Assembly (NCBI RefSeq): GCF_000400465.1
Contig: NW_008806279.1
Coordinates: 30,001-62,000, forward strand
DNA length: 32,000 bases
Direction of reading: 5' to 3'
Origin: Wallemia ichthyophaga EXF-994
Lineage: Eukaryota; Fungi; Basidiomycota
The translations under genes were made by a program, and so were the position numbers. Shown in pieces: positions 4,218-32,000 of this stretch. Under the pieces are notes generated by a model. The model was not told where the DNA came from, did no database searches, and saw only the letters and a list, made by a program, of their open reading frames with translations. Each line of letters starts with the position of its first letter. Positions within the stretch are counted from its first letter, which is position 1.

Positions 4218-5405
4218 ATGGTAAGAAATATCCGCGTCTTGAATCGTTTTCTCTTACGCTTGTTGGTACAGGGCAGGCGTAAGATTACTATAGCTCCTTT
4301 GAAGGAGGATCGTAATAGATCAGTCACCTTTTTAAAGCGTAAGACTGGCTTATTCAAGAAGGCACATGAATTGGGTGTTCTATGTTCTGCAGATGTCGCT
4401 GTCATTGTCTTTGGTAATAACGGCAAGCTACATGAATTCTCTAGTGGAAATATTGAAAAGATTTTGATGAAGTATACGGAGCACTCTGGTGAAACTGAGC
4501 GTCGGGGGCCGCGCGATTTCACTGATTCAAATGAGAACGATGACAATGATAATGATATTGAGCAAGATAATGAGCATGATGATAATATGGAACATCATCA
4601 ATCTACTCATTCACCGAGTGTTAGCGTTAGTGCAAGACAAGATGATAAAGACATCAAACCGCGCATCCAAGTCGATCAATTGGGTGATGAAAATGCTCAC
4701 TCACCTTCACCGTCATTTACGCAAAACCATCCAGCGCACCCACCGCAGCTGCCTCGATCTCCAAAACCAATCTCCCCGAAACCACTTTCACCTTATCCTA
4801 TGCCTTCGTCTTTCTTGTCTCCAAACTCACACACTCAACCACAGCATAATGAAACGTTTATGAATTGGCAATTTGCGCAGATGCAAGCTCAGATGATGTC
4901 ACAACAGCAACAGCAACAGCAACAGCAACATCAACATCAACAGCAACATCAACAGAGAACAACTCAACCATCACCGCAGCAGCATTTCTTATCACCATCA
5001 ACACACCTCCTCAATCCAAACTCACCCAATAGCTCTCATCCACCACCGCCGTTTTTTGCATCGCCAAACATGTCTAATATGCCAGGTATGCCATGGTACG
5101 CTCCCATTCCACCTGTAGCATGGCCACCACCTCCTGCGCCTCCCTCTCAACTACCAAATTCCATGTTCATGGATCCCTTCCAATTCCCCTTGGAGGGATT
5201 TGGTGGCTCATCAGAAACTCCATTCCAGTGGCCGATTTCAAATAAAGATAGTAGCAACGATAACAGTAGCGCACAAAATCCTCAAAATCCTCATGCCCAT
5301 AAATCAGCTGGTTCTGATACGGCTGCAAGCACAACAACGACAGCGACACCTGTCAAGACGGAAGATGACTCACCACGACCTGGAAAGCGAACGCGAAAAA
5401 GTTAG
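4218..5405 (+). CDS. RLM1: MEF2-type MADS-box transcription factor (Rlm1/Smp1-like); join(4218..4220,4272..5405)
   Basis: ATG|GTAAG...CTTAC...TACAG|GGC gives the canonical [39 protein letters not shown] start, followed by MEF2-like KILMKYTEH. The C-terminus is Q/P-rich. Confidence 0.85.
4902..4955 (+). repeat. Coding poly-Gln/His tract (CAA/CAG)
   Basis: Encodes [18 protein letters not shown] (18 codons). Confidence 0.9.
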
Positions 5406-6095: not shown

Positions 6096-8944
6096 TTACA
6101 AGACATCCTGACTCCTCTTCAAATCCCAATCAATCCGCTCGCTAATCTGTTTTATATTGCTAACGATGTGATCTTGCACATCGTCGCCATGACCAGCAGC
6201 GATTTTGAGAATGATTTGATTCAGGGGAGTTGAGCCGAGTATATCGACATGGTCGCCTGTGTTATCCCCACCTCTAAGATCGAGACTATCAGGCTGATGT
6301 TCCACTTCATACGTAACTATCCGGCTGTTGCCTGGGTTGTAGCGTCTATCTTCGCGCCTCCAACCTTCCGCACACATTGCACCTAGAGATGTAAGCGACA
6401 CTGTGCCATCGCCTTGACCAAATTTGACGCCATTCGATACACTAGGCGTAGTACTGTCAGTGCTAAAGTCATTTTCGATGGCGTGTTGAGACGTTAATGG
6501 CAAATCTTCTTGCGATTCATGCGTAACAGTGCAATTTTCCGCCTCACATCGTCCCACCTCGAGATCAGACTGAAGCTGCTGATGCGTCTTGGGTCCTTCG
6601 CTGTAATAGTATGAACGCTGAAGATATTTCATTAGAGGCGTTCGTTGCTTAGATTTTCGGTTTAAAGTCTTCCCACTTACTTCTGTTGGTTTACCCACAC
6701 CGTAAACACAGTAGATGGACATCGACGGCGCATTTGGGAGACGCGTTTCGAGGGGATTTGACCATTTAGTAGGATCATTGTTGTTTGCATCAAGCTAGAA
6801 AAATGTGAGTCTTATTGTCTTCATACACACCACGCATCACCAACCTTTTCCTCATCGATCTCAATACCGTATGAATAGTTGGTCTGCATCATCTTCTGCC
6901 AAACTTGAGGCGTATTGCTTAGTATGTAAGGATTAGATTCGGACATGGTGTAGTTGGTGCGAGTGTTGTTAGCGGCGTGGTTGTCGCGTATAGATAAAAA
7001 GCGGCCTGGATTGTTCACATTAGTGAGTAGCCGCCACTAGAGCACCCACGCACCATACGTGTCTGTCGTGTTGGCTGGATCGTCAGGCGCACTGTTCTCG
7101 TCACCCCACACTGCATCACCCCCCTTCATCCACATACCCGCTATACCAAACCACGAGCGGAAGAGATCAGCGCGCTCCTCCTTGCTGAAGAACTTCTCGA
7201 GAGCGTATGCCCCAGCGGGATTCAGCTCCACAGTGTCTTTCATCTCACCCGAAAGGAGTGCTGTCATAGCTGATGGTGGAGTGGTGGCGTCAACAAGGCA
7301 GCTCAGCTTAGCTTTGAATATCCCACTCACCCTTGGGCACACCGAGTAGTGTGCCGGATATGTTTATTAGAGACTCTATGTGATCCTCTACCCATCGATC
7401 ACCACCCCCGCCATATCCTTCCGCTTCTACCCATTTGAAGAAGTACTATGCGTGGTTTAGTACTGTGTTGAGCTCAGAGCTCTTCTCGCTCCACTCACAA
7501 GCAAAACTGTGCCACCCATCGAATGTGAAGCGAGCTTGAATGGTGTGTTAAGGAAACGAAACGCAATCAACGCCTGCAGTTCCTCTCACAATTGTCTTTT
7601 TGCCGTGTATCTTTTTGTTCAGCTCTATGCGACTCTTTACTCGCGTGAAGTAGCTGTCGCGGTTTTCGAGATTCGTGTAAGCAAGTCTCCAGCTGGCAGG
7701 GACGTCATTGGAATGTCAGACGAAGACATGCTAACACTCACTCATATGCAGCCATTTCGAGATCTTGAATATCATATTAGATGGCCAAGTAGTGTACTAG
7801 TGTATGAAAGAACCTACTATTTGTATCGTCTGGGCTGTGTTAATGTTGGTATTGCGTATTTCTCCACTCACAATTGATGCATGCCAGATTCTCTATAATG
7901 GGTCTCCAGACCCAGTATCTTAGTGGGTCATTAGAGAGTTGTTGCTAGTAGACGCCCACTCACCCTTGCATGAACATACTCGCCGCATCGAGACCTTGCG
8001 CAGGTCTGACGCGTACACCAGCAGGATCTAAACCAGTGTCGCTTTCTCGGATTAGGAACGCACTCCGCCGCTAATATTTCCACCCACCAATCGAGAGAAA
8101 TTTGTCTAATCCACTCATTTTTATCCGCGAAAATACTCTTAAACATGCTAACATGTATGAGCGTGCTAAAATACAATCTGAAGAACAGACCCACGTATGT
8201 GTACCCCAGATCCGCTGTCTGAAACTCGCCAGGCTGCCTGCATCTGTTGACCAGGACTCGAGACCGGTAGTGATTACACCCGGGAAGAGCATCAAAGGGC
8301 TGTTAGCAGTAAGGCCATCTTCAGCAGCTGCCAAACCAGTTTTGAAACCGCGCGAGCTGAACCAGAGCTTAGCATCACTGATGCGTGTGGTGAGGTCATC
8401 GAAGAGGTACTCCCACTGAGCGCCCAGACCGGATAGATCAAAGTCAGGCAGATCAGCCAGTCCATTTGGGAGAGGGGCGAGTATTATAGATGCCAATGCA
8501 AACCCAATGCTGAGAAATAGGGGTAAGAGGAAGCGTCTAGTTTTCACGACGCGTTTCGTGCGCTTGAACGCGCCTTTGCGGTTGGCTTTGTCGTTTTCGC
8601 TGTGTGCTTGAGCGTGTTGAAGGAAAGGGATCTGTGGGGCGTGAGGGAGTGTGTGCGTGTCGATCGAGCTGCGTACTTCGGACAAGTCGACTGAAATTGA
8701 GTACTGTGAGAAAAGCCGGGAGTACACGAGAAGACGTTCTACCCACTCTCGTGCAACGGCGTTCCTGGCGCAACCTGCCAAGATTAAGCAGCGAATCGAG
8801 TAATAAGCTTCTACGCACCACCGAATATGATTTACGGCGAGGATCGTGCCTCAATTTCACCTGAAGCTCAGTGGCCTTCAGTTGTTCCTCTTTCTCCTTG
8901 TCCTGTCCCGCTTGCTGCATTTTCCGGCGCTGATAGATGCCCAT
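6096..8944 (-). CDS. LRO1: Phospholipid:diacylglycerol acyltransferase (PDAT/LCAT family), multi-exon; start codon and first exons less certain
   Basis: N-terminal TM segment (RRFLLPLFLSIGFALASIILA), then LFPGVITTGLESW, DTGLDPAGVRVRPAQG, YWVWRPIIENLA, nucleophile ASHSMG (about 7514-7530), IYCVYGVGKPTE, GDGTVSL and DHVDILGS. Confidence 0.9.
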
Positions 8945-9980: not shown

Positions 9981-11655
9981 TCACTTGGAAGCCTTGCCGG
10001 CTTCTCCGTCGCCCTTCTCGTCTATAGACAACCTCGGTGATTCCTGATCCGAGAGGTTGTAATTTACAAACTCGTTCTCGTCCTTCTCATAGTAATGCAG
10101 CTTCGCGACGACGGGAATAGCCAGTATAATACCTACGAAAAGACCGATGAAGTTAATGTAGATGTGCACCGTCGATGTAGTATCTACTCTCTGGCTGATG
10201 GCCCATGCTACCGTCTGACCCAACGCCTCTGCCGAACGCAGGATACAAACGTAGGTAGAGAGGTTGTTCACACCACACGCATAGTGGCCCACAACCCAAT
10301 AGAGGTAATTTTGAGAGCCCTGCAGAGGATTAGAAGGTTGTATTTGGAGCCGTCGCCAACTCACCTGACCGACGAAAGTCATAAAAAAGACGACAGGGAA
10401 AGCTCTGTTAAATTCATAGGAAGCACCAGTGAAATCGAGCGCAACTGAGTTATTTGTACCGTAAATCGATCTAATAACAGCTATCCAAGTCCACAGACCC
10501 ATCTCGCAGAAGAAAAGAATGGCCAACATAGTCAGGCCTTTGGTCTTCTCACTCCAGCGCTTGCTATCGAGGTAGAAGCCCATCAGGACGGAGCTGATAA
10601 TGGCACCGAATGGGCTAATAAAGCTGGAGAGTGCACGTGTGCGTACGTTAAAGTACAAACTCGTGTAGTTGGACTGATAAGCGTAGTAAAAGTAGCTCAT
10701 GAAGAAGAGAGGTAGGAGCATGAAAACGCGTGGTTCTCTAAAAGCCTTCAACGTGCGCGTCATCTCAGTCACCAATCCATCTGTTTGGCGCATTTCTACT
10801 TTCGATCCGTCGCGTCTGTAAATGTTGGATGGGTTGGGGAAGAGGAAGGCTATTGCAAAGCCAGCAGCCATCAAGCTGAAGAAGACAATGTAGACGTTGG
10901 GATTTACTTTGCCTGAGTCGTACGAGTGTACGTTGAAGCCTAAACTGATGGAACCACCAAGTGCGAGAGGTGCAAGGTTCTTGGCCACACCCCACAACGC
11001 CAAGTAGCGTCCTCTATCGTCATTGGATGGGAGTGATGAGAAGATGGTACCCTCGGCAGCCCAGAATGCAGCGGCGCTGGTGGTTGTTAGCGGGTAATCA
11101 AGTGAGTGTTGTGAACACATACCTAATTCCACAGAGTACACTTCCACCTATAAGAAATCCGTCGTTGTGGGCGATGGAGTTGTAGTACAACGCGGCGCCA
11201 TCTGGGTTGAATTAGAACGAATACGGCACATTAAGAGCCACCCACAGACGCAGAAGAAGGCGCATCCAAGAATAAGCACCGGTTTGAGGCCGATATACGA
11301 TATAACAGGTGCAGATAGCAGGATACCGACAGTCATGAGGCCGTATACGAGTGCGTTGGCTACGGCGATAGCTTTGACACTACCGAAACCACCTGCGCCA
11401 AGATTACCGATGCCTTTAGAGGATAGTGTGAGTGAGGGTGTAAATTGGCTGTTAGTTGAGCTCACAATCAAACATTCCTGTGTGGCGTTAGAAGGCGCTT
11501 GATAGGTATCATGCAACTCACCAGGCTCGCATAGTGTCAAGATATTGGCAACCAGGCCTGCGTATGTTACAGTGCTGTAGAAGCCAGGTTTCTTGAAAAT
11601 CTGCATATCTGGTGAGTCTGTGGGTGTTGAGGATGGTATGAGTACACACAGCCAT
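9981..11655 (-). CDS. UNC-93-like (DUF895) MFS transporter, multi-exon
   Basis: About 12 hydrophobic segments. CEPG..GIGNLGAGG..ANALVYG and LLPLFFMSYFYYAYQSNYTSLYFNVRTRALSSF are typical of fungal UNC-93-like MFS proteins. The start is either MA|IFKK (ATG 11655) or ATG 11606. Confidence 0.8.
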
Positions 11656-13149: not shown

Positions 13150-15681
13150 ATGCATTTGTATCGAGCTACAGTGAGTGCTATTGCCTAATTTCACCGCTTA
13201 ACCTCACGAGCTTCTCAGGCCACAGCCAATACAGGTGAATTGATGGCTACCGTACATTCATATAATACTCACAGCTTCTACAGCACACTACAAAACACTC
13301 CAACAAGCTCAACTCCCTCCACAAGTCAGACAGTGGCAACAACAACACCGTCAACCACGAAATCCTTAAAGGACTCCCACTCAAACCTCAATCAAGCTTT
13401 GAGCTCTGGAAGCTACCAAACCATTATCAGCACTCTCAAACTTCATTACTTTTCTTCAACCACGCCTTCTTTTCCTCCTTACGCCGTGTCTTACACCCTC
13501 GAACTTATCCTTGCTGACCCAATACCCGATCAGCGTACTCTCGACGCCGTTCTGCTCCTATTCAAATATTCCCGCAGAATAGACGCTGTACCTTACGACA
13601 CTAGCGTCGTCGAGTTGTTCGCCAGAGTTTTCACCCATATCGGTGAATATGACCGTGCACTTAAGATTATACGTTCCTTGAAGCGCCTTAATAGGTATGT
13701 TGGTGTTGATGTCATGGAGTTCGTTGCTCAGTCCATGGAAGCGTCCCAACATAACGCGTTGGCTCTACGCACTCTCTCCATGATGGCTTACGACGATATT
13801 CCAACTGTCGGTATTCTCAATATACGTCTACGCTGCTCTATTGCTTGTGAGGAATTCAATGCGCTTAATTTAGTCGAATTCGAGCATTTCAACATATCCC
13901 CAAACCAGGATACCTACCATGCCCTCATATTTGGACATCTTCTCAACGGTAACCTCGCTCAGTCGAAATTTTACCTCGCACAGATGCATAGAAGTGGCTA
14001 CACTGATAACGTCGCCACTCATCTCGCGATTCTGCGCGCATATAGAACACTCGGCATAGACACTACTCTGGAACATAACGCTCTCAACGATACTGCCAGA
14101 CTTGGTTTGAATGCCGATGCAAGGGTCTTGAATGCACTCATGATGTTACGTATCGACGCCGAAGATGACAGATTAGCGTTGAGGATATTCGAGAAATTCT
14201 TCAACCACTCCATAAGGCCAAATACAGACTCATTAGAGGAGCTAGTTAAGGATGCTTTGGAGTCGCGTAATATTGCTTTCAAGAAACCCTTGCCGGATGC
14301 AGCGACATATGCAATAATTATACAGATTTACGCTCGCAATAACAATCTCGCACGGGCTATATCCTACTACGAAGATTACAGACGATATATAGTCAGAGAT
14401 AACCGTCATGTCGAAGCTGCGCTAGTGAGTGCGTACGTCTCCAATGGAGAAACATCCACTGCACTGTGGAAGCTCAGGAATGGTCAGATACGCACTACGA
14501 CAAAATCTATCAATGCTTTACTTAAAGGTAGTCTCTTAACGATGGGAATGGATGGCTTATACATGGCTCTAAGACTGTTCAGGCGGTTCCGTCGCAAACC
14601 TGATCAAAAGACATTGGAACTAATTTTGCATCATCTGCATGACTTGCATATGCCGCCTTCTAAACTTATACGACTTCTCAACAAATTCATCAATATGTCG
14701 TCGCATAGAATTACACTAAATACGCGCCTATTCAACATTATACGTCTCTCGACTTCTGATCACGTAAAGGCATTGGTATACGATCCATCTAAGGGAATAC
14801 AGAGACGCACACCTGGTGTAGGTAGAAAATCGCCAACATATATACCTTCGTACGAATCCATATCAAGAATGCAAGAATATCTCGAAAACAAGGGCATGAA
14901 CGATGACAGTATGTCGGTAGCTATCAAGATGCGTCTGTTGGCAGTAGCTGGTGATTTCGACGAAGCCAAGGCCATGTTGAAGGAAGTAATTGGCAGCGGC
15001 TACAGACCCAACAAATATCATTTCGGCGCATTGATAGGAGGTGCGACTCAAAATCGCAACTTTGAATTAGCGCAATCGATAATAAGTCAGGCAGCTAGAT
15101 CGGGTGTACAGCCTAATTCTGCTATGTTTTCAACCATAATGGCCGGATATGCCAAGGCTGGGATGTTTCAGGAGGCTTGTGAGATGTTTGATTGGATGCT
15201 AACCAAGAAAATGAAGGTGGGAGTGCGTACGACGCAAGTACTCATCAAGACACACCTCGATGCGCGTATGCCAGCTAAAGCACTCAAATTTAGTAAGTGG
15301 TTGGGTGAGGATACTACACGGCTCGACGATGGCACTCTCGCAACGCTCTACCGTCTCTACGACTATCACGGTATGTATAGAGAGGCAGATGAGGCAGTGA
15401 AGCATGTTACACACCCCACCAAGCAGCTCAGGGATGCAGTACGCTTGATGAAGAAACGCAGAATGAAGCTGAAAGTATATCAAGAATACAACAGATCGTT
15501 CTGGTCTAAACTTAATAGTCAACCTGGTCCGTATAGGACATACGACAGCGAACAGATCAAAAGACTGATTATAGAGTGGGGCAAGGTATGGAATAGCTCG
15601 AGAAAATCGGGGGTGTATAGAAGAGGGGCTAAGTTGTCGAGATACTCGCTCAGCAGATATAGAATCACCAGAAGTTTGTAA
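13150..15681 (+). CDS. Pentatricopeptide-repeat protein, probably mitochondrial; join(13150..13170,13219..15681), alternative start ATG 13243
   Basis: PPR motifs: PNQDTYHALIFGHLLNGNLAQS, PDAATYAIIIQIYARNNNLARA, PNKYHFGALIGGATQN and PNSAMFSTIMAGYAKAGMFQEACEMFDWM. A phase-0 GTGAGT..CTAAT..CAG intron follows MHLYRAT. Confidence 0.85.
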
Positions 15682-18835: not shown

Positions 18836-20778
18836 CTAGTGCTTGTAATGCACTTCGTTCTCCGTGTTTTGGATGTTTGGCGATTCTAATGGAACGCTGT
18901 GAACTGTATGTGTCTTGTCGTGTTCATCACTATCATCGTCGAATGACTTTTCATCAAATCTAGACGTGCCACCTGAAGATCTCAATCTTTCTCTTCTCAT
19001 GGAAGAAGTAATAGATTCAGCCTCCATTTCTTGTTGATAGTCATCATCATAATAGCTTTCATCGTCGTCATCTCCCCTCCAGAACCTCTTGTCACCTTTA
19101 GCGAGACGCTTCATCCAAGGTGGAACAAAGTATGCTCTTTGAGTTTCCCAATAGACATCCTTGCGGTCCCAGTCTGGTGGTGAGATCTTGTTCTTGGTGA
19201 GGTATCTAATAGCAGCTGGAATGGAGTTGAGTGCAACGTATGAGCAAATACCAGCAATAAGACCATAAGCAATGTTGTACGAGAGTGGCATCATAATGAC
19301 TGTTAAGAACGCTGGAATGGCATCTCCGAGATATCCCCAGTTGATATCAACAATGTTCTTCGCCATCAGTGATCCGACAATGACCAGTGTACCACCAGTT
19401 GCCCATGATGGGAAGGATGCGAAAATTGGTCCGAAGAAAATAGAAATGAAGAAAAAGACTGAACATGTGAGGGCGGTGATACCAGTTTTACCACCTTCAG
19501 CGATACCAGCAGCAGATTCAATGAAAGCTGTAGCTGGCGAACTGCCCATGGTAGAACCAATCAAAATGGATAAACCATCAGCAGTGTAAGCCATTGTTGA
19601 GTTTTCAAAGTCGAGTGTGCGCTCGTTCATGACACCGGCAAATCTAGCCATGGAGTAAAGAGTTCCAGTTGCATCGAGCAAATCGACATAGAGGAAGGAA
19701 ATGAGAGCGATCCATGTATGACCATCGCCGTAGTCAAAGTTGAGGACACCGGCTGATTGCTTGATTGACCTGTATGTGACGACTTGCTTGAAGAAGTCGA
19801 ATCTCGATTGACCTTCATCGGTGTACGGGAAATAAGTCACTGGAGTTGGTCTTGGCCATGAAATGATAGAAACTAAAATGATACCGAGGAACATGGCACC
19901 CTTGACACGGTAGAGCATCATGTACACAGTTACTACACCACCGCAGAATATACCAAGCCACATGGTAGGTGATCTCATAGTAACAGAATCACCGCATGAA
20001 GAAGATCCATCTGGACAACCGGCCAAACCAACGATATTTGAAGGGTCTTTTCCGATGACGTTCAAACCAGAACCCGAAAGTCCGACAAAAGCAACGTAGA
20101 AACCGATACCAGCACCTGCGGCGAGTGCAACAGAACGAGGAACCAAACGAGCAAGCCAAGCACGAACACCGAGCATAGCCAAAACGACAAAGATGACACC
20201 TTCCAAGAAGACAGCACCAAGCGCAGTTTCGTAGTTAACTCTACCACTGTTATTTGGACCGACGACAGCGTTTGCGAAGTAGGCGTTAAGACCCAAACCA
20301 GGACCGACGGCGACAGGGAGATTAGCCATAAGGCCCATTAACAAAGAACCAATGCAAGAGATAGCAGATGTTGCAGTAATCATATCCCTGTAAAAGTCTT
20401 CTGTGCAAGAACTGTACCCGGGGTCGTCGCAGCCTTGAGCGTAGTCGGAGCATCTGCAAGTACCACCGCACTGTCTAAGAATATTTGAGTTTACAGAGAT
20501 AATGTAAGCCATAGCAACTAATATTTTGTCAGTGGAGTAGCTCCATTACCAGAGAAGACGCACCGAATGTTGTAATTCCAGCACGAATTTCTTGGGTGAA
20601 CTTAGCACCAGCGCGTGCCTTCTTGTGGCCTGCCAGAACGCTTAGCCTCGTTTGCCATTGCAACAGCCCACTCACCAGAACCATCCAATCTGAAGTAACG
20701 TCCAAACCAACTATCCGCGATCCTGTCGTTTGCCGATTCATTCCAATTCGAAAGGCGTTCAGCAATCTTGCTGGGCAT
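18836..20778 (-). CDS. azgA: AzgA-family purine (adenine/guanine/hypoxanthine) permease, 3 exons
   Basis: FTQEIRAGITTF.AMAYIISVN, ANLPVAVGPGLGLNAYF, FLYVDLLDATGTL, GSSPATAFIESAAGIAEGGKTG and AIPAFLT..MPLSYNIAYG. Confidence 0.92.
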
Positions 20779-21596: not shown

Positions 21597-23358
21597 TCAC
21601 CCGATTGCTTGATTCCACCCGAGCTTACCACCCCAGCATCTCCACATGCGCTCGACCACTGCTCTCTTATCGATCACTTGGAGTTGTGGTGCCTCTAAGG
21701 ATGCTAAGTCTTCGCACAAGCCTCTCCGCAGACGCTTGTCATTGATATCTGATGTACTTTTGCGCATTATTGATGTAGCAAGCAAAAGGTGACCCAGTGT
21801 CTGTTGTGGCAGTGGTGACTGTGACGATGGCACGAGCAGACAGTCTATCCGCCTGATACACTCAAACAGCTCAAGACGACGTCTCAAAGAGAGCTCTTTT
21901 TTGCCAATTACCAATCCTAATCCACGCGATAGCCAACTACCAACAAAGTAGACAATCGCGAGCGATGGCGCAACTCCCACAAAGCCGAATGTCAGCTCTT
22001 GCGACTTGAGGAGGGCGTCTAGTTTGGTCATAGTAGTGTCGACATCGCACTTGACTTTTTGTATCTGAATCAGCAGCGCTCTGACCAGTTGACCGAACAA
22101 TGCTGATTTGAATGGCGTCTTCATCTCGTTTTCATACACTTGTAGCACAGCTGACAAGTCACCTTTGCGGACGTTCTCACCTAGCTCCAGTAGTTGTGCA
22201 TCAGATAGTTTGAGATTGTCTTTGCCTAACTCTTTCACCATTCTCTCCAGACTAGCTATGTCACTCTCGAGACCAGCTTCAGTGACGCCCAATCCATGAC
22301 CACCGAATCTGATAGTACTGATTATGTGTGATGCAGGCTCTACAACCCAACTTTGTATGAACCCTTTTACAGTCTCACTAGCATCTCTCAAGTACGCCTT
22401 TACAGCGTCTTGCGATCTCAGCACCACCCTAGCTGCAATGAGCAGAAGAGGGGGACCGACGACAAATTTTGGCCAATTGCGAATGAGCGTGGATGGTCTT
22501 TTGTGATCTTGCACGCGCTGTTGAATGCTGGTTGTGTGAGATGGTATAACGCTATTCACAAGCGTCTTTAAATTGTCCAAGATTGCTTTAAATGAGGTTG
22601 ATTCGCTTACTTTTACGCTTTTTTCCTTATCAAGTGAGCTCAACACGCTCGTTAAATGTTTGATCCAGCTGTTAAGGTCACCACCGAGACTTCTACCGCT
22701 GACGCCACCATTTCCGGGTCCAAATCCATACTTAAGTCCATCAAACGATGCTAACATACCGACAGAGTTGGCAATTTCATCCTTCAACGCTCCCAAATCA
22801 TCCACATGGGACTGTAACTCAAACTTGAGCAAATTGAGGGGTCTGGAAGTGAGCGTGCGCAGATTAAGCGATAATCCAGCTTGGCTATAAGGAAAAAGGG
22901 AAAACATAGATGGTTGGGCATTCTTGGCGTAGTTAAAAGCGCGATTGGGCAAAGCTGGAGGATTTTAGGTTAGAATCTTGATCTGTAATGGCTCACCCAC
23001 TTTGTAATAGATAATTGTACGACTTGAAACGAGATTCGAGCATTCTTTCCCAAAAATTACTCAAATCATTCAGCCTTACTGAGTGATGAAGCAGCGTCTC
23101 GCCGACGTTATCATACAGCACCAGCGTAACTCTGGCAAGCAAAAGCCACTCAAGCTCACTCTCGCCCTGCTTTATATCTAGGCTGTCTAATGCTTTGGAA
23201 GCAGCCTCAAGCGAGTGATCCTTCACCAGCATATTGAGTAGCTTCGAGATTTTGTCTCCACTTTTAAGCGCTTTTTCTGATATTGGAAATGAATCTAGCT
23301 GCAAGCTTAGGCTGCCTAGCCTGTCACTCAAATGTGACGAACATGTCCGTGAGGTCAT
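21597..23358 (-). CDS. NCA2: Nuclear control of ATPase protein 2; complement(join(21597..22954,23001..23358))
   Basis: LIQIQKVKCDVDTTMTKLDALLKSQELTFGFVGVAP, FIQSWVVEP and LESDIASLERMV. A 46-nt GTGGGT intron restores YLLQTLPNR. Confidence 0.9.
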
Positions 23359-23619: not shown

Positions 23620-25094
23620 TTATTGCTCTTTTCTATACTTGTCTCTAGATTGGTCCATCTTGCTTCTTATGTGGGAGTCATTTAGTATTGAAGAGCACGT
23701 CTCCATCAAATTATCTTCATCTTCCGGTATGAAAAAGTTAGACAAACTGGTGAGTATTGTCTCAAAGTTGGATTCCTTGTCTATTATGTTATGCCTCAAT
23801 GACCATAGGATGGATATTGAAAACGCAACAACAGCATCTGGACCGTAGAATATCATCAAATCCCAAAATCTTATTTGGGTTTTGAACGGTACTGTGTTTG
23901 CGAATAGCGTAATGTACCATTTAGTAGCATATGAAGTTGGTGGTACATTCTCCTCATCTAGCTTTACAAACACTTTTGGCATTGTCAGCTTGACAATTTC
24001 ATCCTGTACGTGCAGATGTTCAAGCAAACCAGGGAACCCATGTTTGAATACGTTGTGCATTCCGTAATACTTGTCTAGTAAAGTTAACATTGCGTAAGCC
24101 TTTTCAGGTTCGTAATAACACAGCAATGTAGCAGCTATCGGGCCCATTCCCTGACAATATCCATTCGGCTGTAGGGAAAATGCATGTAGCACGTGAAATA
24201 AGTTGCGTTGACCTAACCCATACCTGCTGTGAAATAGTATGTGACCACTTATCGTTCTAGGTACGTCTAAATCTATCTGTATATCGTAGCTCGACGGCTC
24301 AGCTTGTCTATCATAATACTGTCTTATGAGGGATTCTATGACTGATTTGCTCGAATTCCCTGAGTTACTAGAGCCTCCTTCCACGTCTTCATCGACTGTA
24401 GAGATTGATCTTGTTGAAGGTGTTCGCATGCTAATTTTTTCACTGGATACGGACGCATTCGAGTTGTAATAAGGTCTTGGAAAAAGTCCCTGCTTTTGTA
24501 TATTCTGAAGCAGCATAGACTCCCAAGCCGCGGCTCTCCACCTGTCTGGTACGCCCTTGACGAGACGCCTAGCTAAGGTGCTTTCACTGTAGCTGCGTCG
24601 CAACCTCCAACGCCTTATATTACGACCGTAGTCACGTTGTTTAGGCTGTAACATGTTTCTCCACTTTTCAATCCTGTTGATTTCTTTGGTGGACAAAGTA
24701 TCCATGCCCTTCAAGTACTTGTTCACCACCTTTGTCTTATCGAGTTCACTTTCTGGTCTTGTCTTGTGAGACTTAGAAGGCCTCTTAGATGACGGGTTAT
24801 GTTTAGTCTTGTAGAGAATAGTAAGTCGCTGCTTGTTCTCATAATTGTGGAAAAAGAATCCATATCTTTGGTAAATGAGCGGTAGAATCGCTACAATACA
24901 CCGACATACCTATCAAGATTATCATAGAGAGCATCTGAGGAGTCTTCGTGCACGTTCTCGCCGTTGTAGTTGTTACGTATCTTCTGAGCCAGCTGCTCCT
25001 CCTTGATCTCGTGCTCAGATTTATAATAGCTCAATTCTGTGTTATCGAATGCAGCTGACTGTCTTTTCACAGCTGACGTTGTCGCCGTCGTCAT
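23620..25094 (-). CDS. TBC/Rab-GAP domain protein; complement(join(23620..24865,24910..25094))
   Basis: DRYGF, KGVPDRWRAAAW, IDLDVPRTISGH (R finger), GYCQGM (Q finger), YATKWYITLF and RFWDL. Confidence 0.92.
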
Positions 25095-25148
25095 CGTCGA
25101 TTGTTACGAAGAAAGCCCGGTTCGCATAAAACGACCAAGATAATCAGG

Positions 25149-26423
25149 ATGGAGGTCACAAGGCGGCTGCATATTGCGGGAATGACGCCATCTATCACGC
25201 TCAAAGACTTGGAGAATAGATTTAGCAGATTTGGTAGCGTTTTAAGCGTCGAAGATTGTGGCAGGGATGGTAATGGTGATCCACGCAAATATTGCTTCAT
25301 GAACTTCCAAGCAAACCAGGCACAACTTAATAAGCGTATGTCTATCCCATTGTTCTATCAAATTACTTAGATTTCTCCAGTGATGCAAACATTCTCCAAC
25401 TCGCACTGGAAGGACGCTAAGTTGAGGATCAGCGAAGCAAGGCCCAACTATATTACTAGATTGGAAATAGACAAAGAGAAAGCTGCAGAAAAGGAGCGCA
25501 GGAAGGAGTTTAAGCGAGTGAGAAGACTTCTCCAAAAGAAATTAAGAGGCAACCTCAAGACCTACGCAAAGGATATGCGCTTGACAACACCTTACAATGC
25601 AAAATGGAGAAATGTGAGTCTTTCCCAATCACAATAGGCCTTCTAACCATTCAAATAGGGCTGGTACATCACTCCCGCTAAGCACCTCATACATCCAATA
25701 CACATACGCCCTGATCATCCTGTTCCAGTGCCATCCACGTCTAGAGATCCATCGAAATCTTCAAACGACTCAAAAGCTCCGAAACCACCAAAGAAATCTA
25801 AGCAGATCATGATAGATCCGCGCAAGTATGGCCCTATGCATTATGGAGAGAGTATGATAGGCAGTGAAAACGTAAGCTCTGACAATAGACCTTGGAGATG
25901 TGAACAAGACGAGCAAGGTCGTGTAAAATGGCTCAAGGATGGTGACGATGATGAGATATACAACGTAGCTCACGCTGATCCACAGAAAGTTTACGAAGAG
26001 AATGCTGATCAGTATAACAATTTGGATGACAAAGTATTTGCGTCAAAACCTAGACCTAAAGCGAACAACATCGACGAAATTGAGAATCAAGTAAGAAGAC
26101 TAGAAGAGAACGAGAAGAAATATGATGAGGATGCACTCAGTGATGACGATGAGGATGAGATATTTGCAATGCTCGAGAGCCAGAGGTTGAGGGAGAACAG
26201 AAGCGAGTCACCACTGTTTGAAGGTGCACAACCAAAATCTTTTGACTGGCTAAACACAATTCCAGAGTTAGACAAGACGGAACAAGCCAAAGCTCAGCCT
26301 AAGGTCGATCCGTCCGCGGAACAAATCAAGCAAGAGCACAAATCACAAAACGCACTTCTTGATTCACTTTTTCAGAGTAATGACTTTGGAAGAAAAGCAT
26401 CAATAGATATAGACTCCGACTAG
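25149..26423 (+). CDS. Nucleolar RRM protein, NOL8-like; join(25149..25335,25381..25613,25659..26423)
   Basis: N-terminal RRM: TRRLHIAGM..DLENRFSRFGSV..G.PRKYCFMNF..LNKLMQTFSNSHWKDAKLRISEARPNYITRLE, the NOL8/Nop8-type pattern. An acidic tail follows. Confidence 0.72.
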
Positions 26424-26515
26424 TGTTGTAATAGTAGTATTAGCAAGATTATTCACATTTTAATACAGGATTGTGATTAAGATTAAAGAGAAACTAGCGA
26501 TGACTTGGTCTTACG

Positions 26516-29500
26516 CTAGATGATTGCGAACCAATTGCAAGAAGCTTTGGGTTCGACATATGTCCTATAAAACACTTATGAGAAAAGTAATTATCAGCGC
26601 ATCATCAACTCACCTGATATAGAATTTTGTGAGCGGTGTTTGCGGTTGAAAGTGCTTGTGCCAGACATGCGCGAGCGCACAGAGAATGGCGAATCCGCTC
26701 CTGTTCTGTAAGCTGAGTTTTTGTGGTTGGCATGATTGATGTGGCTCATGTCATGTTGCAGGCCCGCAACTGTATGTTTGCCACCACAACAAACTCTTGG
26801 GTCATCAAGGCCCTCATCAGATGCATCGTTGAGGTTCTCATCCTTGTAACGATAAGTTGCGCTTGATTTCGGTCTAGATGGACTTTCCAAGAAGCTAGCG
26901 TTGTTCGCTCTCAGGTATTCAGATGCAGGCGTACCTGCTCTCTTACCCGCTGATGAGCTATAGCCGGAGAAGTACTTTTTGGCACGAGGTGTAGTACCCA
27001 TTCCCATTCCAATATTCGATAGCGCTGACCTTGTCTTGGTTTTAGCAGTGGAGAACGACCAATCAGCATAACCAGTAGCTGTCTTTCCAACGCTGCTGCT
27101 TATTGAGTTACGCGGCTTAGAACCGAAGTCCATCTCTGCGATACTGCTAAATGATGGCCTTCCACTAGCCTCTGAACCGGCGTAAGGTGCTGGATTTATC
27201 GAGTTGCGTTGAAGAAGGTATGACAGTGCGTTCAGCCACATTTCGTGTCTCTCTCTATTTGATGCTGTTAATTTGAGCTCACGATCTTGTGAAGTGAAAA
27301 CAAGTATACTCTCGTGATGTAAGCCAGGTGGAGATGGATTTGGATCATCGATGCTCTCTACGCGCTCAATTGGAACACTCTTCGACTGGGTTTCGGATAC
27401 GTTAGGTCCACCCTGCTCATCTTCACTCCAGAAAAGCATCTTGTTGTATGGATGGAGCCAGAAGTATCTTCTGTGACGCTTGCCGGTATTTCCCTTTAAG
27501 ATAGATTTGCGAGTGTACTTGAAGAGGAATTCACCTAAAAGATCGTTAGTCCGGTCAGTCAAAGGTAAAAATCATCACTCACCAATCATGGTTTGCGTAA
27601 TAGCTTGAATGATTGGATCTGGTTGGGTATTTCCGAGTACATTGCTGCCTGCCATGCTGACACTGTCTTCATCGCTCTCGTCATCTTCGTCCAGATGATT
27701 ATTAGCACTCTTTGGCTCACTCAAGTGTGCAGAAGATGAGCTCACGCTGTAAGAACGGCGCTCGATATTCGACACAGTACCGAACGAGTCACTCGTCTTT
27801 CTTCTGTGTGATTGCGTAGATGTATTTCCGGGCTTGGCTGATCTGAAGCTACCGAGTGACGAAAGCGGTGTACCCGATCTACTATTGTGCTGACTACCGA
27901 CTGCACTCTGGAAAGACATGTTCGACATTTGTTTCCTCAATGCAGGTCTACCCTTAGAGCCAGTAGAGATGGTTTGAGAGCCTCTGTTAGTTGCTCTACG
28001 AATAAATTCTGGCGGCGGTGGTGATGTTGGTCTTGGTGGTGGCATACCTCCGTATGGCAAGGCTGTAGAACTTGAACGAGAGATGATGTCAATGTAGCCA
28101 CCTTGAACTGAAGTTGAGGAGGCTCTCCTTGGAACATCGGGAACCTGTCTAGATCCCCTTCTTGAGACACTCTTGTGCTTGTCTGATAGAGCTGTGCTGA
28201 CGTCCTCAACGTTGTGCTCCGATGTTTGATCAGGGTTTTCGAGATCGGCTTTTGGTTTACTTGTTGGAGATGTTGGATGCTCTTGTTCATGATAGACGTG
28301 AATTGTCTTGACACGTGGTGTGTTGTCATTGTCATTGTCGGTCTGTACACCGAGATGGGTTTGGCCTTGGAGTGTCTGAGATCCGACAGAGGCTGTATTT
28401 GGTTTCGTTGCAGGGAGGTGTTTGATTTTCTCAACCGGAACCTCAACTTTCTTTTCAACAGTCTTTTCGACGATTTTCTGGGCCGTGTGAGAAGTATAAT
28501 GACTGGAGCTGACTGTAACATACCTCAATCTCGATTGGTACCTCAACTGGCACTTCAACCTTCTTTTCAACAGATAATTCGACGGGTACCTCAACCTTCT
28601 TCTCAACAATTTTCTCAACAATTTTCTAGGCTGTGTGAGATGCATAGCAGGTAGCACAAAATAACATACCTCAACTGGTACTTCAATTGGAACTTCAACC
28701 TTCTTTTCAACAATTTTTTCGACAAGTTTCTGGGCTTTGTGAGGATTCTGGTAGATGAAGCATACTAAGACATACCTCAACGGGCACCTCGATTGGCACC
28801 TCAACTTTCTTGTCGACGACCTTTTCAACAAATTTCTGTGATGTGTGAGATTGTAATGCTGAGAGAAATCTGACTTACTTCCACAGGAACTTCAACAGGT
28901 ACCTCAACTGGTACTTCAATCATCTTTTCAACAACGTTTTCGACGATTTTCTGTAACGTGTAAGATTTAACTGGTGATGGGAATTTGACTTACCTCCACA
29001 GGAACTTCAACGGGCACCTCAACTTTCTTCTCCACAATCTTTTCAACGAGTTTCTCCACAGGTACCTCTTTCTCGATGACGCGTTCGTCTGGTTTGAGCT
29101 GCTTTTCGACAACAATTTCGATAGGCTTCTCGACGACGCGCTCAACGATCTTCTCGACTTCGATTTCCTTGGGTATTTCTATGATCTTCTCAACTGGTAT
29201 CTCGACAGTCTTCTCGACAATCTTCTCTACTGGTACTTCGATGATCTTTTCGAAAGGTACCTCGACTGTCTTCTCTACAGGAACCTCGACAACCTTTTCA
29301 ACGATCTTCTCGATAGGTACTTCTACTATTTTCTCTACAGGTACCTCGACTATCTTTTCTACAGGTACCTCGACAACCTTTTCAACGATCTTCTCGATAG
29401 GTACTTCTACTATTTTCTCTACAGGTACCTCGACTATCTTTTCTACAGGTACCTCGACAACCTTTTCAACGATCTTCTCGATAGGTACTTCTACTATTTT

Positions 29501-32000
29501 CTCTACAGGTACCTCGACTATCTTTTCTACAGGTACCTCGACAACCTTTTCAACGATCTTCTCGATAGGTACTTCTACTATTTTCTCTACAGGTACCTCG
29601 ACTATCTTTTCTACAGGTACCTCGACAACCTTTTCAACGATCTTCTCGATAGGTACTTCTACTATTTTCTCTACAGGTACCTCGACTATCTTTTCTACAG
29701 GTACCTCGACAACCTTTTCAACGATCTTCTCGATAGGTACTTCTACTATTTTCTCTACAGGTACCTCGACTATCTTTTCTACAGGTACCTCGACAACCTT
29801 TTCAACGATCTTCTCGATAGGTACTTCTACTATTTTCTCTACAGGTACCTCGACTATCTTTTCTACAGGTACCTCGACAACCTTTTCAACGATCTTCTCG
29901 ATAGGTACTTCTACTATTTTCTCTACAGGTACCTCGACTATCTTTTCTACAGGTACCTCGACAACCTTTTCAACGATCTTCTCGATAGGTACTTCTACTA
30001 TTTTCTCTACAGGTACCTCGACTATCTTTTCTACAGGTACCTCGACAACCTTTTCAACGATCTTCTCGATAGGTACTTCTACTATTTTCTCTACAGGTAC
30101 CTCGACTATCTTTTCTACAGGTACCTCGACAACCTTTTCAACGATCTTCTCGATAGGTACTTCTACTATTTTCTCTACAGGTACCTCGACTATCTTCTCC
30201 ACAGGCACCTCAACCTTCTTCTCCACAGGCACCTCGACGATCTTTTCTACTGGGACCTCAACGATCTTTTCTACTGGAACTTCGACGATCGTTTCTACCG
30301 GGACTTGGACGATTTTTTCAACTGGAACCTCTAAGATCCTTTCGACTGGGACCTCCACGAGTTTTTCGACTGGAACCTCGATGATTTTCTCAACCTCCTT
30401 CTCAACGATGCTCTCAACAGGCACCTCCTTCTCTACAATCTTCTCAATAACGCGGTCTTGCACACCACCCAACTGAGAAGAATCAGCGAGGTTAGTCTTG
30501 TGTGAGGTAGGCTGAGAAGGTGGAATGAAAGAATCACGGAGACCGCTAGCGCTCAGTTTGTTCTTGACAGCTCTGCCGCGTCTCCTACCCAACGACGACA
30601 TGGAGACGTTAGCTTGGGAGATATTGGTATTGGTATTATAATTGCTATCTTCTTCTGAGCTACTCTCCTGTTGAGTCCCTGTCGCTGATGTGCTGCTTGG
30701 TTGTTTGACTGGCGAGTGTGAAGCGAAAAGCGGATCGAGGTCGTCATCGTCGTTATTATCATCATTCTGGTCAGGTGAGTGAGAGGCATCTGTTTCGAAT
30801 TCAGGGAGCTGAATTGATGTTTGACTGGTGTCATCGAGCTGTTTGGAGTTAGTTATGTGCGTACACATATTTGGCAGTACTCTCAACTCACCTCAATAAC
30901 ATCACTTCTATCATACTTATCGTGCTTATCAGTCAAGGCAGACTTACGAAGTTTAGAAGCGCGTGATTTGCTTGGTTTGCCTTTGTTCTTGGATTGTAGA
31001 TTGGTTGGGCTGCTCTGGCTGACGTTAACTTGCTCCTCCTTCTCCTCATCGCTATTATCACCACTCTCATCACTCTCACTATCCTCAACACCTTCGTCCG
31101 GCCCTCTTTGAGACAGGGCCAATTTGCGTTTATATTCGATGATATGACCTTTTTCGTTGCGCAATTGTCTCTGCAGGCCAGCAATAACTCTCTCTTTGTT
31201 CCCATAAGCGACGCGTAGGGTTTCATTTTCGGAAGCGAGAGCAGTAGCGGTGCGAGCGCCACCTGGGGTCATATTAGCATCGTTAGTGTTAACGCGAGGT
31301 GGTCTGGGTGAATCGAAGACGGGCAGGCTGAAGTTACCCGTATGTCTACGTCTACCAGCTGAGTCGCTTTCCTCGAAGATCTCATCGAGGAGGCCCTGCG
31401 TGGGATGATACTCCCCTGGATGACCGAAATCGCTGCGATCGGGGTCGAATTCTGCGTCGGTGTTGAATCTGCGGCTGAAATCGTTGTCATACATCGTATT
31501 GTTCATGCTGACGTCGTTGGAATGGTTGCGTACACGCTTCGCTCGACCCTCCTTCTCTAATCTGTCGATCTCCTTCTTGGCACTCTCAACCGCACTGGCT
31601 AAATCACCCTTTTCACGCGTTGCTGTTGCTCGGTCTTTCCTAGCGAGAGCTGTTTCTGTCTCGTATTTTTGTTTAAGTTGCTCGAGTGATTGGTTCAGTT
31701 TCTCGCTATCTTGGCGCCGTTCTTCGAGGGAGTCTCTCGAGAGCGAGAGGGACTTAGTAAGTTTGTTGCGCTCAGCTTCAAGTTTGGTGAGTGAGTCCTG
31801 ATGGTTTGTGTTACTTGTGTACAGCTCCTGGTTTTGCATTTCGAGATTCCAGTTGTCTTCTTTGAACCTATCGACTGTCTGTTCGAGCGAGTTGAGACGA
31901 AGGAGGAGATCGTCATGTTTTGCGTGCGTGTGCTCCTTATCTAATTGAAGATTTTTGATAGTATCGTCGCGTTCACTGATCAGACTCTGTAGACGTCTCA
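26516..32000 (-). CDS. NUM1: Num1/ApsA/Mcp5-like cortical dynein/mitochondria anchor with coiled coil, VPVEKIVE repeats and C-terminal PH domain; 5' end lies beyond the window, stop at 26516 (if spliced) or 26594
   Basis: Coiled coil with [17 protein letters not shown] domain [14 protein letters not shown]...[41 protein letters not shown]. Introns at 30839-30891, 28951-28993, 28836-28878, 28730-28775, 28626-28669, 28478-28523 and 27535-27582 keep one frame. Confidence 0.88.
28478..28993 (-). repeat. Tandem exon+intron cassettes: 5 phase-0 introns and 4 small exons (72, 60, 60, 102 nt)
   Basis: Each exon encodes K[ILF]VE..VE...VP[VI]E..E. The introns are 43-46 nt, begin GTAAGT or GTATGT, and share a CTYACA branch motif. 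Confidence 0.85.
29283..30196 (-). repeat. Coding tandem array with an 84-nt unit, about 10.9 identical copies ([28 protein letters not shown])
   Basis: CGACAACC recurs at 29287, 29371 and so on to 30127 (period 84). Sequence lines 420 nt apart are identical. Degenerate 24-nt units flank both sides. Confidence 0.97.

What the first reader, a model, noticed from the sequence alone, without database searches (positions are those of the whole stretch)
28420..30453. Fungal Num1/ApsA cortical anchor with about 600 aa of alveolin/articulin-like EKIVEVP repeats
Seen: between the coiled coil and the PH domain lies a long tract made almost only of V, P, E, K and I ([12 protein letters not shown]). Known: EKIVEVP is the signature repeat of alveolate alveolins (IMC proteins), and VPV repeats typify articulins and epiplasmins, which polymerise into membrane skeletons. 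S. cerevisiae Num1 instead has unrelated 64-aa repeats and clusters at the cortex. Inference: a convergent charged-repeat module that may self-assemble into a sub-membrane scaffold or act as a length-tunable spacer for dynein and mitochondria-cortex tethering.
Basis: partly seen in the sequence, partly recalled or inferred. Interest (0 to 1): 0.72.

Follow-up and report, generated by a model that had tools for sequence, protein, structure and literature searches.

The report
Wallemia Num1/ApsA anchor with alveolin-like repeats
A Wallemia (basidiomycete) gene for the Num1/ApsA cell-cortex anchor has a 603-residue middle section of EKIVEVP-type repeats like those of protist alveolins, but this kind of tract was already reported in basidiomycete genes that are Num1 orthologues, so this is a new, recently expanded example of a known oddity.

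Summary
On the minus strand, window 28424-30454 encodes, after removal of five short introns, a 603-aa tract that is 96% V/E/K/I/P and holds 24 exact EKIVEVP heptads. It lies between a Num1/ApsA-type coiled coil and an Mcp5-type PH domain.

The organism is a Wallemia species: the W. mellicola orthologue is 76% identical and syntenic. The match to Pfam IMCp (58.5 bits) depends on residue order, because reversed and shuffled tracts score nothing. The same tract type also occurs in many prokaryotic metagenome proteins.

The feature is not new. Gould 2008 and Goodenough 2018 reported "epiplastin-like" genes in Basidiomycota. The Cryptococcus and Kockovaella sequences they print have the same coiled coil, tract and PH layout, although those authors did not recognise them as Num1.

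My survey found the tract in 8 of 112 long homologues (Wallemia, Calocera, Mycena, Marasmius, Austropuccinia, Microbotryomycetes). It is absent from Polyporales, Ustilaginomycotina, Ascomycota and Mucor.

Half of the window's tract is a very recent expansion: eleven near-identical 84-bp units, plus duplicated exon-intron modules. Relatives carry about 220-240 aa.

The best reading is a fast-evolving, acidic, extended spacer in Num1's variable middle. Alveolin-like self-assembly remains untested.

The parts
26494..32000 (-). Partial CDS of the Num1/ApsA/Mcp5 orthologue. The fragment is 1710 aa. About 179 N-terminal residues lie beyond the window end, judging from the 99%-identical fragment P0236. 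There are nine exons and eight introns, and the stop codon is at 26496-26494.
   Evidence: Splice model and translation. It is colinear with the annotated W. mellicola protein P0235. Synteny with RRM and RabGAP-TBC neighbours.
31525..32000 (-). Part of the N-terminal Num1-type coiled-coil domain ([11 protein letters not shown]...[13 protein letters not shown]...[17 protein letters not shown]).
   Evidence: BLASTP of P0236 (99% identical to the window) against Cytospora 'Anucleate primary sterigmata protein A' gives E 4e-22, and against Sporisorium 'related to NUM1' gives E 5e-22 (names). The same motifs appear in the C. neoformans sequence printed in PMC6212826 Text S10.
28424..30454 (-). The V/E/K/I/P repeat tract, aa 498-1100, 603 aa. 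It is interrupted by five phase-0 introns. Net charge is about -59 and pI is 4.65.
   Evidence: Pfam IMCp PF12314 scores 58.5 bits, E 8e-16; reversed and shuffled controls give no hit.
29279..30202 (-). Array of eleven 84-bp units (28 aa each: [28 protein letters not shown]). Nine are 100% identical (30118-29363) and the two outer units differ by 1-2 bases. Together they code 308 aa, about half of the tract.
   Evidence: The W. mellicola and L001 orthologues do not have this array.
28478..29062 (-). Five tandem exon+intron modules of 104-148 bp. The three complete mini-exons of the common type (exons 3-5) code K-x-V-E-K-x-V-[ED]-K-x-[VI]-E-V-P-...-V-P-V-E; exon 6 is longer and ends VPIEIE. Each exon is followed by a 43-46 nt intron. 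The introns inside the tract are 28993-28951, 28878-28836, 28775-28730, 28669-28626 and 28523-28478.
   Evidence: TRF periods of 106 and 115 bp. The alignment shows that the introns are homologous too. All boundaries are phase 0. W. mellicola has 3 such introns in its annotated model and L001 has 1.
27206..27613 (-). Mcp5-type PH domain, aa 1371-1490, split by intron 27582-27535.
   Evidence: PF12814 144.3 bits, E 2.6e-42; PF00169 40.8 bits.
27614..28423 (-). Basic, S/T/P-rich linker between the tract and the PH domain. It includes the conserved GSQT...GVQTD and [14 protein letters not shown] motifs.
   Evidence: Translation. Conserved in W. mellicola, L001 and more distant orthologues. pI 9.4.

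Best explanation
This is the Wallemia orthologue of the fungal cortical anchor Num1/ApsA/Mcp5. An N-terminal coiled coil is joined to a C-terminal PH domain; in yeast those two ends bind dynein/mitochondria and plasma-membrane PI(4,5)P2 respectively. The 603-aa EKIVEVP tract is this lineage's version of the hypervariable, repeat-built middle region of Num1 proteins. It belongs to the 'epiplastin-like/alveolin-like' tract class already reported in basidiomycete genes, which are in fact Num1 orthologues. I infer that it works mainly as a long, proline-punctuated, net-acidic polyampholyte spacer without a compact fold. Fully extended it would span up to about 190-205 nm. It would hold the coiled-coil end away from the membrane-bound PH end. 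Its length changes quickly through slippage or unequal exchange of 84-bp units and through duplication of exon-intron modules. Its resemblance to alveolins is a motif-level convergence, not shared ancestry. Shown here: gene identity, architecture, repeat anatomy, recent expansion, distribution among homologues, and the order-specific IMCp match. Inferred: the spacer role, the extended conformation and the convergence.
For: Identity: Mcp5_PH at 144 bits. The coiled coil is homologous to ApsA and to a 'related to NUM1' protein. The W. mellicola orthologue is 76% identical and syntenic. Known class: the C. neoformans XP_568826.1 and Kockovaella sequences printed in PMC6212826 Text S10 show the same coiled coil, EKIVEVPV tract and [18 protein letters not shown] layout. 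CNAG_03655 appears in that paper's BLAST list and is separately noted as a Num1p homologue. Variable middle: Polyporales and Mucor orthologues carry other repeats at the same position. The tract is 603 aa here, against about 236 aa in W. mellicola and about 220 aa in L001, with conserved landmarks. The 11 near-identical 84-bp units and the 5/3/1 counts of exon-intron modules show ongoing length change. Protein-level constraint: identical VEKIVEVP peptides are encoded by 5 DNA versions that are 71-92% identical. No fold: AF2 mean pLDDT is 33 and there is no PDB relative. Proline falls every 8-16 residues, the fraction of charged residues is 0.41 and the net charge is -59. [quoted passage not shown] Convergence: similar tracts with precomputed PF12314 hits sit in prokaryotic metagenome proteins that carry HHH_5, GYF_2, ZapA or FHA domains.
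Against: No experiment bears on the tract's function in any fungus. The amino-acid motif is kept across subphyla, and conserved landmarks within Wallemia point to more constraint than a pure spacer needs. Alveolin domains with the same heptad mediate alveolin-alveolin interactions and filament stabilisation (PMC12465100), so self-association is not excluded. A single-sequence AF2 run on a low-complexity repeat is weak evidence for disorder. The copy number of the perfect array may depend on the assembly.
Confidence: 0.6

Rival explanations
1. One reading: the tract is a self-assembling, alveolin-like module. It polymerises or cross-links Num1 molecules under the plasma membrane, driving or stabilising the immobile cortical Num1 patches or a local membrane skeleton.
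For: The tract matches Pfam IMCp at 58.5 bits while reversed and shuffled controls match nothing, so the directional EKIVEVP motif is present, with 24 exact heptads. Alveolin domains mediate alveolin-alveolin interaction and filament stabilisation (PMC12465100). The protein is anchored to the membrane by a PH domain, so it sits in the right place. The motif is retained at protein level across synonymous DNA variants and in several basidiomycete classes. There is a functional parallel: the Toxoplasma alveolin IMC10 is the pellicle-side partner of a mitochondrion-pellicle contact, which its authors compare with Num1 (PMC9845740).
Against: Goodenough et al. report no epiplast-like layer in Cryptococcus, whose Num1 orthologue has about 700 aa of the tract. 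104 of 112 long homologues, including Polyporales, smuts, ascomycetes and Mucor, lack it. [quoted passage not shown] AF2 gives no confident structure. Half of the tract here is a very recent expansion, which is more typical of a tolerant linker. The same tract type serves as an apparent linker in many prokaryotic proteins.
Confidence: 0.22
2. The tract is truly homologous to alveolin or epiplastin domains. It would have been inherited from an early eukaryote or acquired by horizontal transfer from an alveolate or euglenid and fused into Num1.
For: The IMCp profile match is above the gathering threshold. Goodenough et al. list early HGT as one formal alternative for the basidiomycete genes.
Against: The tract sits inside a vertically inherited, syntenic gene. 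It is visibly built by local duplication of 24/84-bp units and of exon-intron modules with fungal-type introns. It is absent from Mucor, ascomycetes and many basidiomycetes. The same motif class arises in prokaryotes and, according to PMC6212826, in insects. Most fungal orthologues do not reach the IMCp threshold. Short low-complexity repeats carry almost no phylogenetic signal.
Confidence: 0.03
3. The tract's size is an assembly artefact, or the region is not translated as modelled, for example because part of it is intronic.
For: The 924 bp of perfect repeats cannot be resolved by short reads, and independent short-read contigs break there. No RNA data were available.
Against: One frame stays open for 1.9 kb, closed only by the modelled introns. 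The W. mellicola annotated model and the L001 contig carry the same tract in frame. Even with the array reduced to one unit, about 320 aa of tract remain. Flanking older repeats have diverged at synonymous sites.
Confidence: 0.1

Closest known systems
Cryptococcus neoformans CNAG_03655 / XP_568826.1 ('tubulin binding protein, putative') and the other basidiomycete 'epiplastin-like' genes of Goodenough et al. 2018 (PMC6212826) and Gould et al. 2008
   Same: The architecture is the same. The N-terminal coiled coil shares motifs (EFA.EIGQ.LL.EVRRLQ, E[ED]NWNLE, KxETxxAxARK). A long EKIVEVPV tract follows, and the C-terminus holds an Mcp5-type PH domain ([11 protein letters not shown]...YKYTR). 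Goodenough et al. report one such gene per genome.
   Different: The class and genus differ (Wallemiomycetes). The tract here is 603 aa against about 700 aa. Half of it is a perfect 11x28-aa array, and introns are embedded in the repeat. Those papers did not identify the gene as Num1/ApsA.
Saccharomyces cerevisiae Num1
   Same: Both have a coiled coil, a repetitive middle and a PH domain. The PH domain belongs to the same Pfam family. Both are cortical anchor proteins with a tandem-repeat centre.
   Different: The yeast repeats are twelve 64-aa units unrelated in sequence. EF-hand-like and FFAT motifs were not examined here. [quoted passage not shown]
Aspergillus nidulans ApsA / S. pombe Mcp5 (and Cytospora 'ApsA', Sporisorium 'related to NUM1')
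   Same: The N-terminal coiled coil (E about 1e-22) and the Mcp5_PH domain are homologous.
   Different: None of the ascomycete and smut homologues I examined (Cytospora 'ApsA', Coniochaeta, Lipomyces, Sporisorium and other smuts) has a V/E/K/I/P tract of 60 aa or more. At most they hold 20-46-aa remnants. ApsA and Mcp5 themselves were not examined.
Alveolins (IMC1 family; Pfam IMCp PF12314) of Apicomplexa, ciliates and dinoflagellates
   Same: Both have tandem V/P-rich charged repeats with the heptad EKIVEVP. The profile match is above threshold and depends on residue order. Both sit at the cell cortex.
   Different: Alveolin domains are about 140 aa, belong to multi-gene families and build the subpellicular network under alveoli. 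Here there is one gene in a fungus without alveoli, with the tract flanked by a coiled coil and a PH domain. The origin is most likely convergent.
Euglenid and protist articulins, and epiplastins in general (acid-base-dyad medial domains, VPV modules)
   Same: There are 43 VPV and 80 EK dyads, and the layout is head, low-complexity medial domain and tail.
   Different: Epiplastins are defined partly by belonging to organisms that build an epiplast. The predicted beta-strand content could not be confirmed here.

Membership tests
Num1/ApsA/Mcp5 cortical anchor family | C-terminal Mcp5-type PH domain (Pfam PF12814) | tested here: met
   144.3 bits, E 2.6e-42, full-length profile match 2-119/119
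Num1/ApsA/Mcp5 cortical anchor family | N-terminal coiled-coil domain homologous to that of Num1/ApsA | tested here: met
   BLASTP of the 99%-identical N-terminal fragment P0236 against Cytospora ApsA gives E 4e-22, and against Sporisorium 'related to NUM1' gives E 5e-22. The window holds the C-terminal two thirds of this domain.
Num1/ApsA/Mcp5 cortical anchor family | Architecture of coiled coil, long variable middle and PH domain in one polypeptide; orthology by synteny | tested here: met
   Gene model. W. mellicola orthologue is 76% identical with the same RRM and RabGAP-TBC neighbours.
Num1/ApsA/Mcp5 cortical anchor family | Cortical localisation; anchoring of dynein and mitochondria; PI(4,5)P2 binding | not testable with these tools
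   Needs cell biology. Inferred from the family only.
Alveolins (IMCp domain proteins) | Tandem repeats with consensus EKIVEVP that match Pfam IMCp above the gathering score | tested here: met
   24 exact heptads. 58.5 bits against a cut-off of 21.1. Reversed tract and 4 shuffles give no hit.
Alveolins (IMCp domain proteins) | Found in alveolates, as components of the network under cortical alveoli | tested here: not met
   The host is a Wallemia fungus. The flanks are Num1 domains.
Alveolins (IMCp domain proteins) | Common descent of the repeat domain | tested here: inconclusive
   Local tandem growth, patchy fungal distribution and the same tract type in prokaryotes favour convergence. Low-complexity sequence cannot settle this.
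Alveolins (IMCp domain proteins) | Self-association into detergent-resistant filaments | not testable with these tools
   AF2 single-chain model has pLDDT 33.
Epiplastins sensu Goodenough et al. 2018 | Low-complexity medial domain rich in acid-base dyads and V/I, flanked by a normal head and tail | tested here: met
   80 EK dyads, 96% V/E/K/I/P, ordinary flanks
Epiplastins sensu Goodenough et al. 2018 | [quoted passage not shown] | tested here: inconclusive
   The AF2 model has low confidence throughout, mostly coil with a few short helices and no strands.
Epiplastins sensu Goodenough et al. 2018 | The organism builds an epiplast | not testable with these tools
   The paper reports no epiplast-like layer in Cryptococcus. 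Nothing is known for Wallemia.
Basidiomycete 'epiplastin-like / tubulin-binding protein' genes (Gould 2008; Goodenough 2018) | Basidiomycete gene with a classic acid-base-dyad domain and many VPV modules, with the same flanks as C. neoformans XP_568826.1 | tested here: met
   Read against the sequences printed in Text S10. Single-copy status in this genome was not tested.

The most novel reading that the evidence does not exclude
The EKIVEVP tract is a functional, convergently evolved membrane-skeleton module. Tethered to the plasma membrane by the PH domain, it would self-associate like an alveolin domain. That would nucleate or stiffen Num1 cortical patches in those basidiomycetes that have it. 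Its copy number would then tune patch size or the mitochondrion-cortex distance. This would make the long-unexplained 'epiplastin-like' fungal genes a tractable system for studying how alveolin-type repeats assemble.
Probability: 0.15. Interest if true: 0.7.

Novelty: new member of a known kind. Interest (0 to 1): 0.35.

Why it matters
Three points give it modest value. First, it joins two separate literatures. The basidiomycete "epiplastin-like / tubulin binding protein" genes, whose annotation puzzled Goodenough et al., are the Num1/ApsA cortical anchor. That explains the annotation and places an alveolin-type repeat on a membrane-bound anchor of known function. Second, fungi with tractable genetics could be used to test what EKIVEVP repeats do physically, which is still unclear for alveolins. 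Third, the locus is a clean example of rapid length evolution in a coding repeat, through perfect 84-bp units and duplicated exon-intron modules. It does not reveal a new kind of system.

Tried and rejected
- **PDB sequence search with the tract:** only spurious weak hits.
- **AF2 on 301 aa of the tract:** pLDDT 33. I therefore ran no fold search, because the matches would be meaningless.
- **Pfam on the N-terminal 497 aa:** no family above threshold. I established coiled-coil homology by BLASTP against named orthologues instead.
- **The 1995 ApsA paper:** the body text is not held, so ApsA's own middle region could not be read there.
- **The search for homologous proteins:** it returned only hits within about 0.6-1.75 times the query length. 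The first search therefore gave mostly ORF fragments. I solved this with a tract-deleted long query and the representative-library search.
- **IMCp hit as pure composition:** rejected by the reversed and shuffled controls.
- **IMCp hit as proof of alveolin homology:** rejected, because the same precomputed hit appears on many prokaryotic proteins and most fungal orthologues fall below threshold.
- **Long plus-strand ORFs across the array (28985-30334 and 29076-30476):** rejected as by-products of the repeat.
- **Literature linking Num1 to alveolins:** no paper in the searchable library describes alveolin-like repeats in Num1. The only co-mentions are apicomplexan papers that cite Num1 as an analogy.

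Full report
**The observation**

The finding lies in a minus-strand eukaryotic gene that runs off the window end. Reading the minus strand, I placed eight GT..AG introns of 43-53 nt. That gives one open frame of 1710 aa from window 32000 to a stop codon at 26496-26494. Residues 498-1100 (window 30454..28424) form a 603-aa tract. Its composition is V 33%, E 25%, K 15%, I 13% and P 10%, together 96%. It holds 24 exact EKIVEVP, 27 VPVEKIVE and 43 VPV, with proline mostly every 8, 12 or 16 residues. Tandem Repeats Finder reports an 84-bp period with 12.2 copies at 97% identity.

**The gene**

The C-terminal part matches Pfam Mcp5_PH (PF12814) at 144 bits, E 2.6e-42. The closest named protein is a 1464-aa Wallemia mellicola hypothetical protein, 76% identical. 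Its locus has the same neighbours as the window, an RRM protein and a RabGAP-TBC protein. The organism is therefore a Wallemia species other than W. mellicola (Wallemiomycetes, Basidiomycota).

A 99%-identical fragment (P0236) supplies the N-terminus that the window lacks. Its coiled-coil region aligns with a Cytospora "Anucleate primary sterigmata protein A" at E 4e-22 and with a Sporisorium "related to NUM1-nuclear migration protein" at E 5e-22. Both ends of the protein thus place it in the Num1/ApsA/Mcp5 family.

**How alveolin-like the tract is**

The full tract hits Pfam IMCp (PF12314) at 58.5 bits, E 8e-16, in nine stretches. The gathering score is 21.1. The reversed tract and four residue shuffles give no IMCp hit. 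The resemblance therefore lies in the ordered motif and not only in composition.

The hit is still not diagnostic of alveolins. A search with the tract returned 1911 proteins. The top hits are mostly unnamed metagenome proteins, apparently prokaryotic, with HHH_5 ("flap endonuclease-like"), GYF_2, ZapA or FHA domains, and many carry the same precomputed PF12314 hit. Of five fungal orthologues with clear tracts, only Mycena reaches the IMCp threshold in full-length context. The window scores well because its expanded 28-aa unit contains two canonical heptads.

No solved structure resembles the tract. AlphaFold2 on 301 residues gives mean pLDDT 33 with no confident element.

**It is already in the literature**

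Goodenough et al. [quoted passage not shown] They place them in three classes of Basidiomycota, mostly Tremellales, with a single copy per genome. They add that Gould et al. 2008 had already noted two examples, in Cryptococcus and Coprinopsis. They also saw no epiplast-like layer in Cryptococcus.

Their Text S10 prints C. neoformans XP_568826.1 and Kockovaella XP_021873516.1. Both begin with the Num1-type coiled coil (DMEFATEIGQNLLVEVRRLQ..., EENWNLEV, LKAKHETDMAQARR). Both continue with about 460-700 aa of EKIVEVPV repeats. Both end with [19 protein letters not shown]..., which is the Mcp5 PH domain. They are therefore Num1 orthologues with the same layout as the window gene.

CNAG_03655 appears in that paper's BLAST list. 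A different paper describes it as having "43% homology to S. cerevisiae Num1p" (PMC9552768). I found no paper in the searchable library that joins the two facts.

**Distribution**

I searched the 1.84-billion representative library with the C-terminal 604 aa. I then scanned the long hits, plus the long proteins, for V/E/K/I/P/R/D tracts.

- Of 112 homologues of 900 aa or more, eight have a tract of 60 aa or more, always between the coiled coil and the PH domain.
- These are W. mellicola (236 aa), Calocera cornea (355), Mycena vulgaris (118), Marasmius tenuissimus (138), Austropuccinia psidii (326 in total), Meredithblackwellia eburnea (277), Sporobolomyces salmonicolor (116, a KEVIKEV/PEP variant) and an unnamed Logan protein (476).
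- No tract of 60 aa or more was found in Polyporales (Obba, Laetiporus, Hermanssonia), Panaeolus, Amanita or Serendipita.
- The same holds for four Ustilaginomycotina, the ascomycetes Cytospora, Coniochaeta and Lipomyces, and Mucor. Only weak runs of 30-52 aa occur in some of them.
- Laetiporus and Mucor carry other repeats at the same position.

With the published Tremellomycetes, the tract occurs in at least six basidiomycete classes. It is patchy, not generic.

**How the tract grows**

Eleven consecutive 84-bp units (30202-29279) encode the same 28 residues. Nine are 100% identical in DNA and the outer two differ by 1-2 bases. That makes 308 aa of very recent origin, and it is absent from W. 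mellicola and from a syntenic metagenome relative, L001.

The 3' end of the tract consists of five tandem exon+intron modules. All boundaries are phase 0, and the introns are themselves homologous. W. mellicola has three such introns in its annotated model and L001 has one.

The three tracts share unique landmarks such as [40 protein letters not shown]. The tract is therefore ancestral to the genus, at about 220-240 aa, and has more than doubled in this lineage. Identical VEKIVEVP peptides are encoded by five DNA versions that are 71-92% identical, which suggests constraint on the peptide.

Short-read contigs of near-identical strains break at the array. The exact copy number therefore needs confirmation.

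**Mechanism**

What is shown is a membrane-binding PH domain and a Num1-type coiled coil joined by a middle region. That region is repetitive, lineage-specific and variable in length across fungi.

[quoted passage not shown] The Wallemia tract has a fraction of charged residues of 0.41, a net charge of about -59, a pI of 4.65, frequent proline and no predicted fold. Fully extended it would span about 190-205 nm.

I therefore favour, at confidence 0.6, an extended acidic spacer whose length drifts or is tuned by repeat gain and loss.

The main rival, at about 0.2, is alveolin-like self-association that helps build Num1 cortical patches. Alveolin domains do mediate alveolin-alveolin interactions (PMC12465100). 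In Toxoplasma the alveolin IMC10 is the pellicle-side partner of a mitochondrion contact, which its authors compare with Num1 (PMC9845740). Against this rival stand the absence of the tract from most orthologues and the reported absence of an epiplast-like layer in Cryptococcus.

True homology or horizontal transfer from alveolates is unlikely, given the local duplication history and the recurrence of the motif in prokaryotes.

**Verdict**

The alveolin resemblance is genuine at motif level. The phenomenon, however, was published in 2008 and 2018 for basidiomycete genes that are Num1 orthologues.

What is new here is modest:
- a Wallemia member of the class;
- the explicit identification of those genes as Num1/ApsA;
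- a wider taxonomic distribution;
- a well-resolved, very recent expansion mechanism.

I rate it a new member of a known kind, with interest 0.35.

Noticed in passing
window 28478-29062 (minus strand); L005 8400-8720; L001 7380-7500: The 3' end of the repeat tract grew by tandem duplication of whole exon+intron modules. The exons are 60-102 nt in phase 0 and the introns 43-46 nt. The introns are alignable with one another. There are five such introns here, three in W. mellicola and one in the metagenome relative.
   Followed up: yes
window 28340-28400 (aa ~1110-1130), and homologues P0237, P0239, P0260, P0266, P0267: A short motif of the type G-[SVC]-Q-T-[DEL] (GSQT...GVQTD) flanks the tract in Wallemia. 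It immediately precedes the tract in Marasmius, Mycena and Calocera (GCQTD, GCQMD, MQTD). In Polyporales (xMQIQTLP) and Mucor (ETQCDPEDPS) it is itself the repeated unit. It may be a conserved linear motif of the Num1 middle region, or the seed from which the different repeats grew.
   Followed up: partly
window 28985-30334 (+) and 29076-30476 (+): Two long opposite-strand ORFs (449 and 466 aa, with repetitive F/Y/L/D/N-rich and S/T/F/G/I-rich translations) span the array. They are by-products of the repeat, which has no stop codon in several frames, and not genes.
   Followed up: yes
proteins P0115-P0234: Many unnamed metagenome proteins, apparently prokaryotic, carry V/E/K/P/I tracts 35-95% identical to this one. 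The tracts are joined to HHH_5 ('flap endonuclease-1-like'), GYF_2, ZapA or FHA domains, and many carry precomputed Pfam IMCp hits. The IMCp model is therefore not clade-specific.
   Followed up: partly
proteins P0235, P0260, P0276, P0281: Fungal Num1 orthologues with 236-355-aa tracts give no IMCp hit when scanned full-length. Domain-based surveys would therefore miss this class.
   Followed up: partly
window 86-24729: The rest of the window is ordinary fungal housekeeping. It holds Brf1 (86-1753 +), an ATP synthase alpha/beta-family subunit (1937-3313 -), an SRF-type MADS factor (4218-5405 +) and an LCAT-like fragment (6096-6722 -). It also holds an MFS transporter (9981-11147 -), a PPR protein (13240-15681 +), a xanthine/uracil permease (18836-20512 -), NCA2 (21597-22952 -) and RabGAP-TBC (23620-24729 -). 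An RRM protein with an acidic tail lies at 25101-26423 (+). No tRNA genes were found. The order NCA2, RabGAP, RRM, Num1 is shared with near-identical Logan contigs and with W. mellicola.
   Followed up: partly
L002, L003, L004 and P0236: Short-read assemblies of near-identical strains (98-99% aa identity) end at or just outside the repeat tract. Strain-to-strain copy number of the 84-bp unit therefore cannot be read from public short-read data.
   Followed up: no
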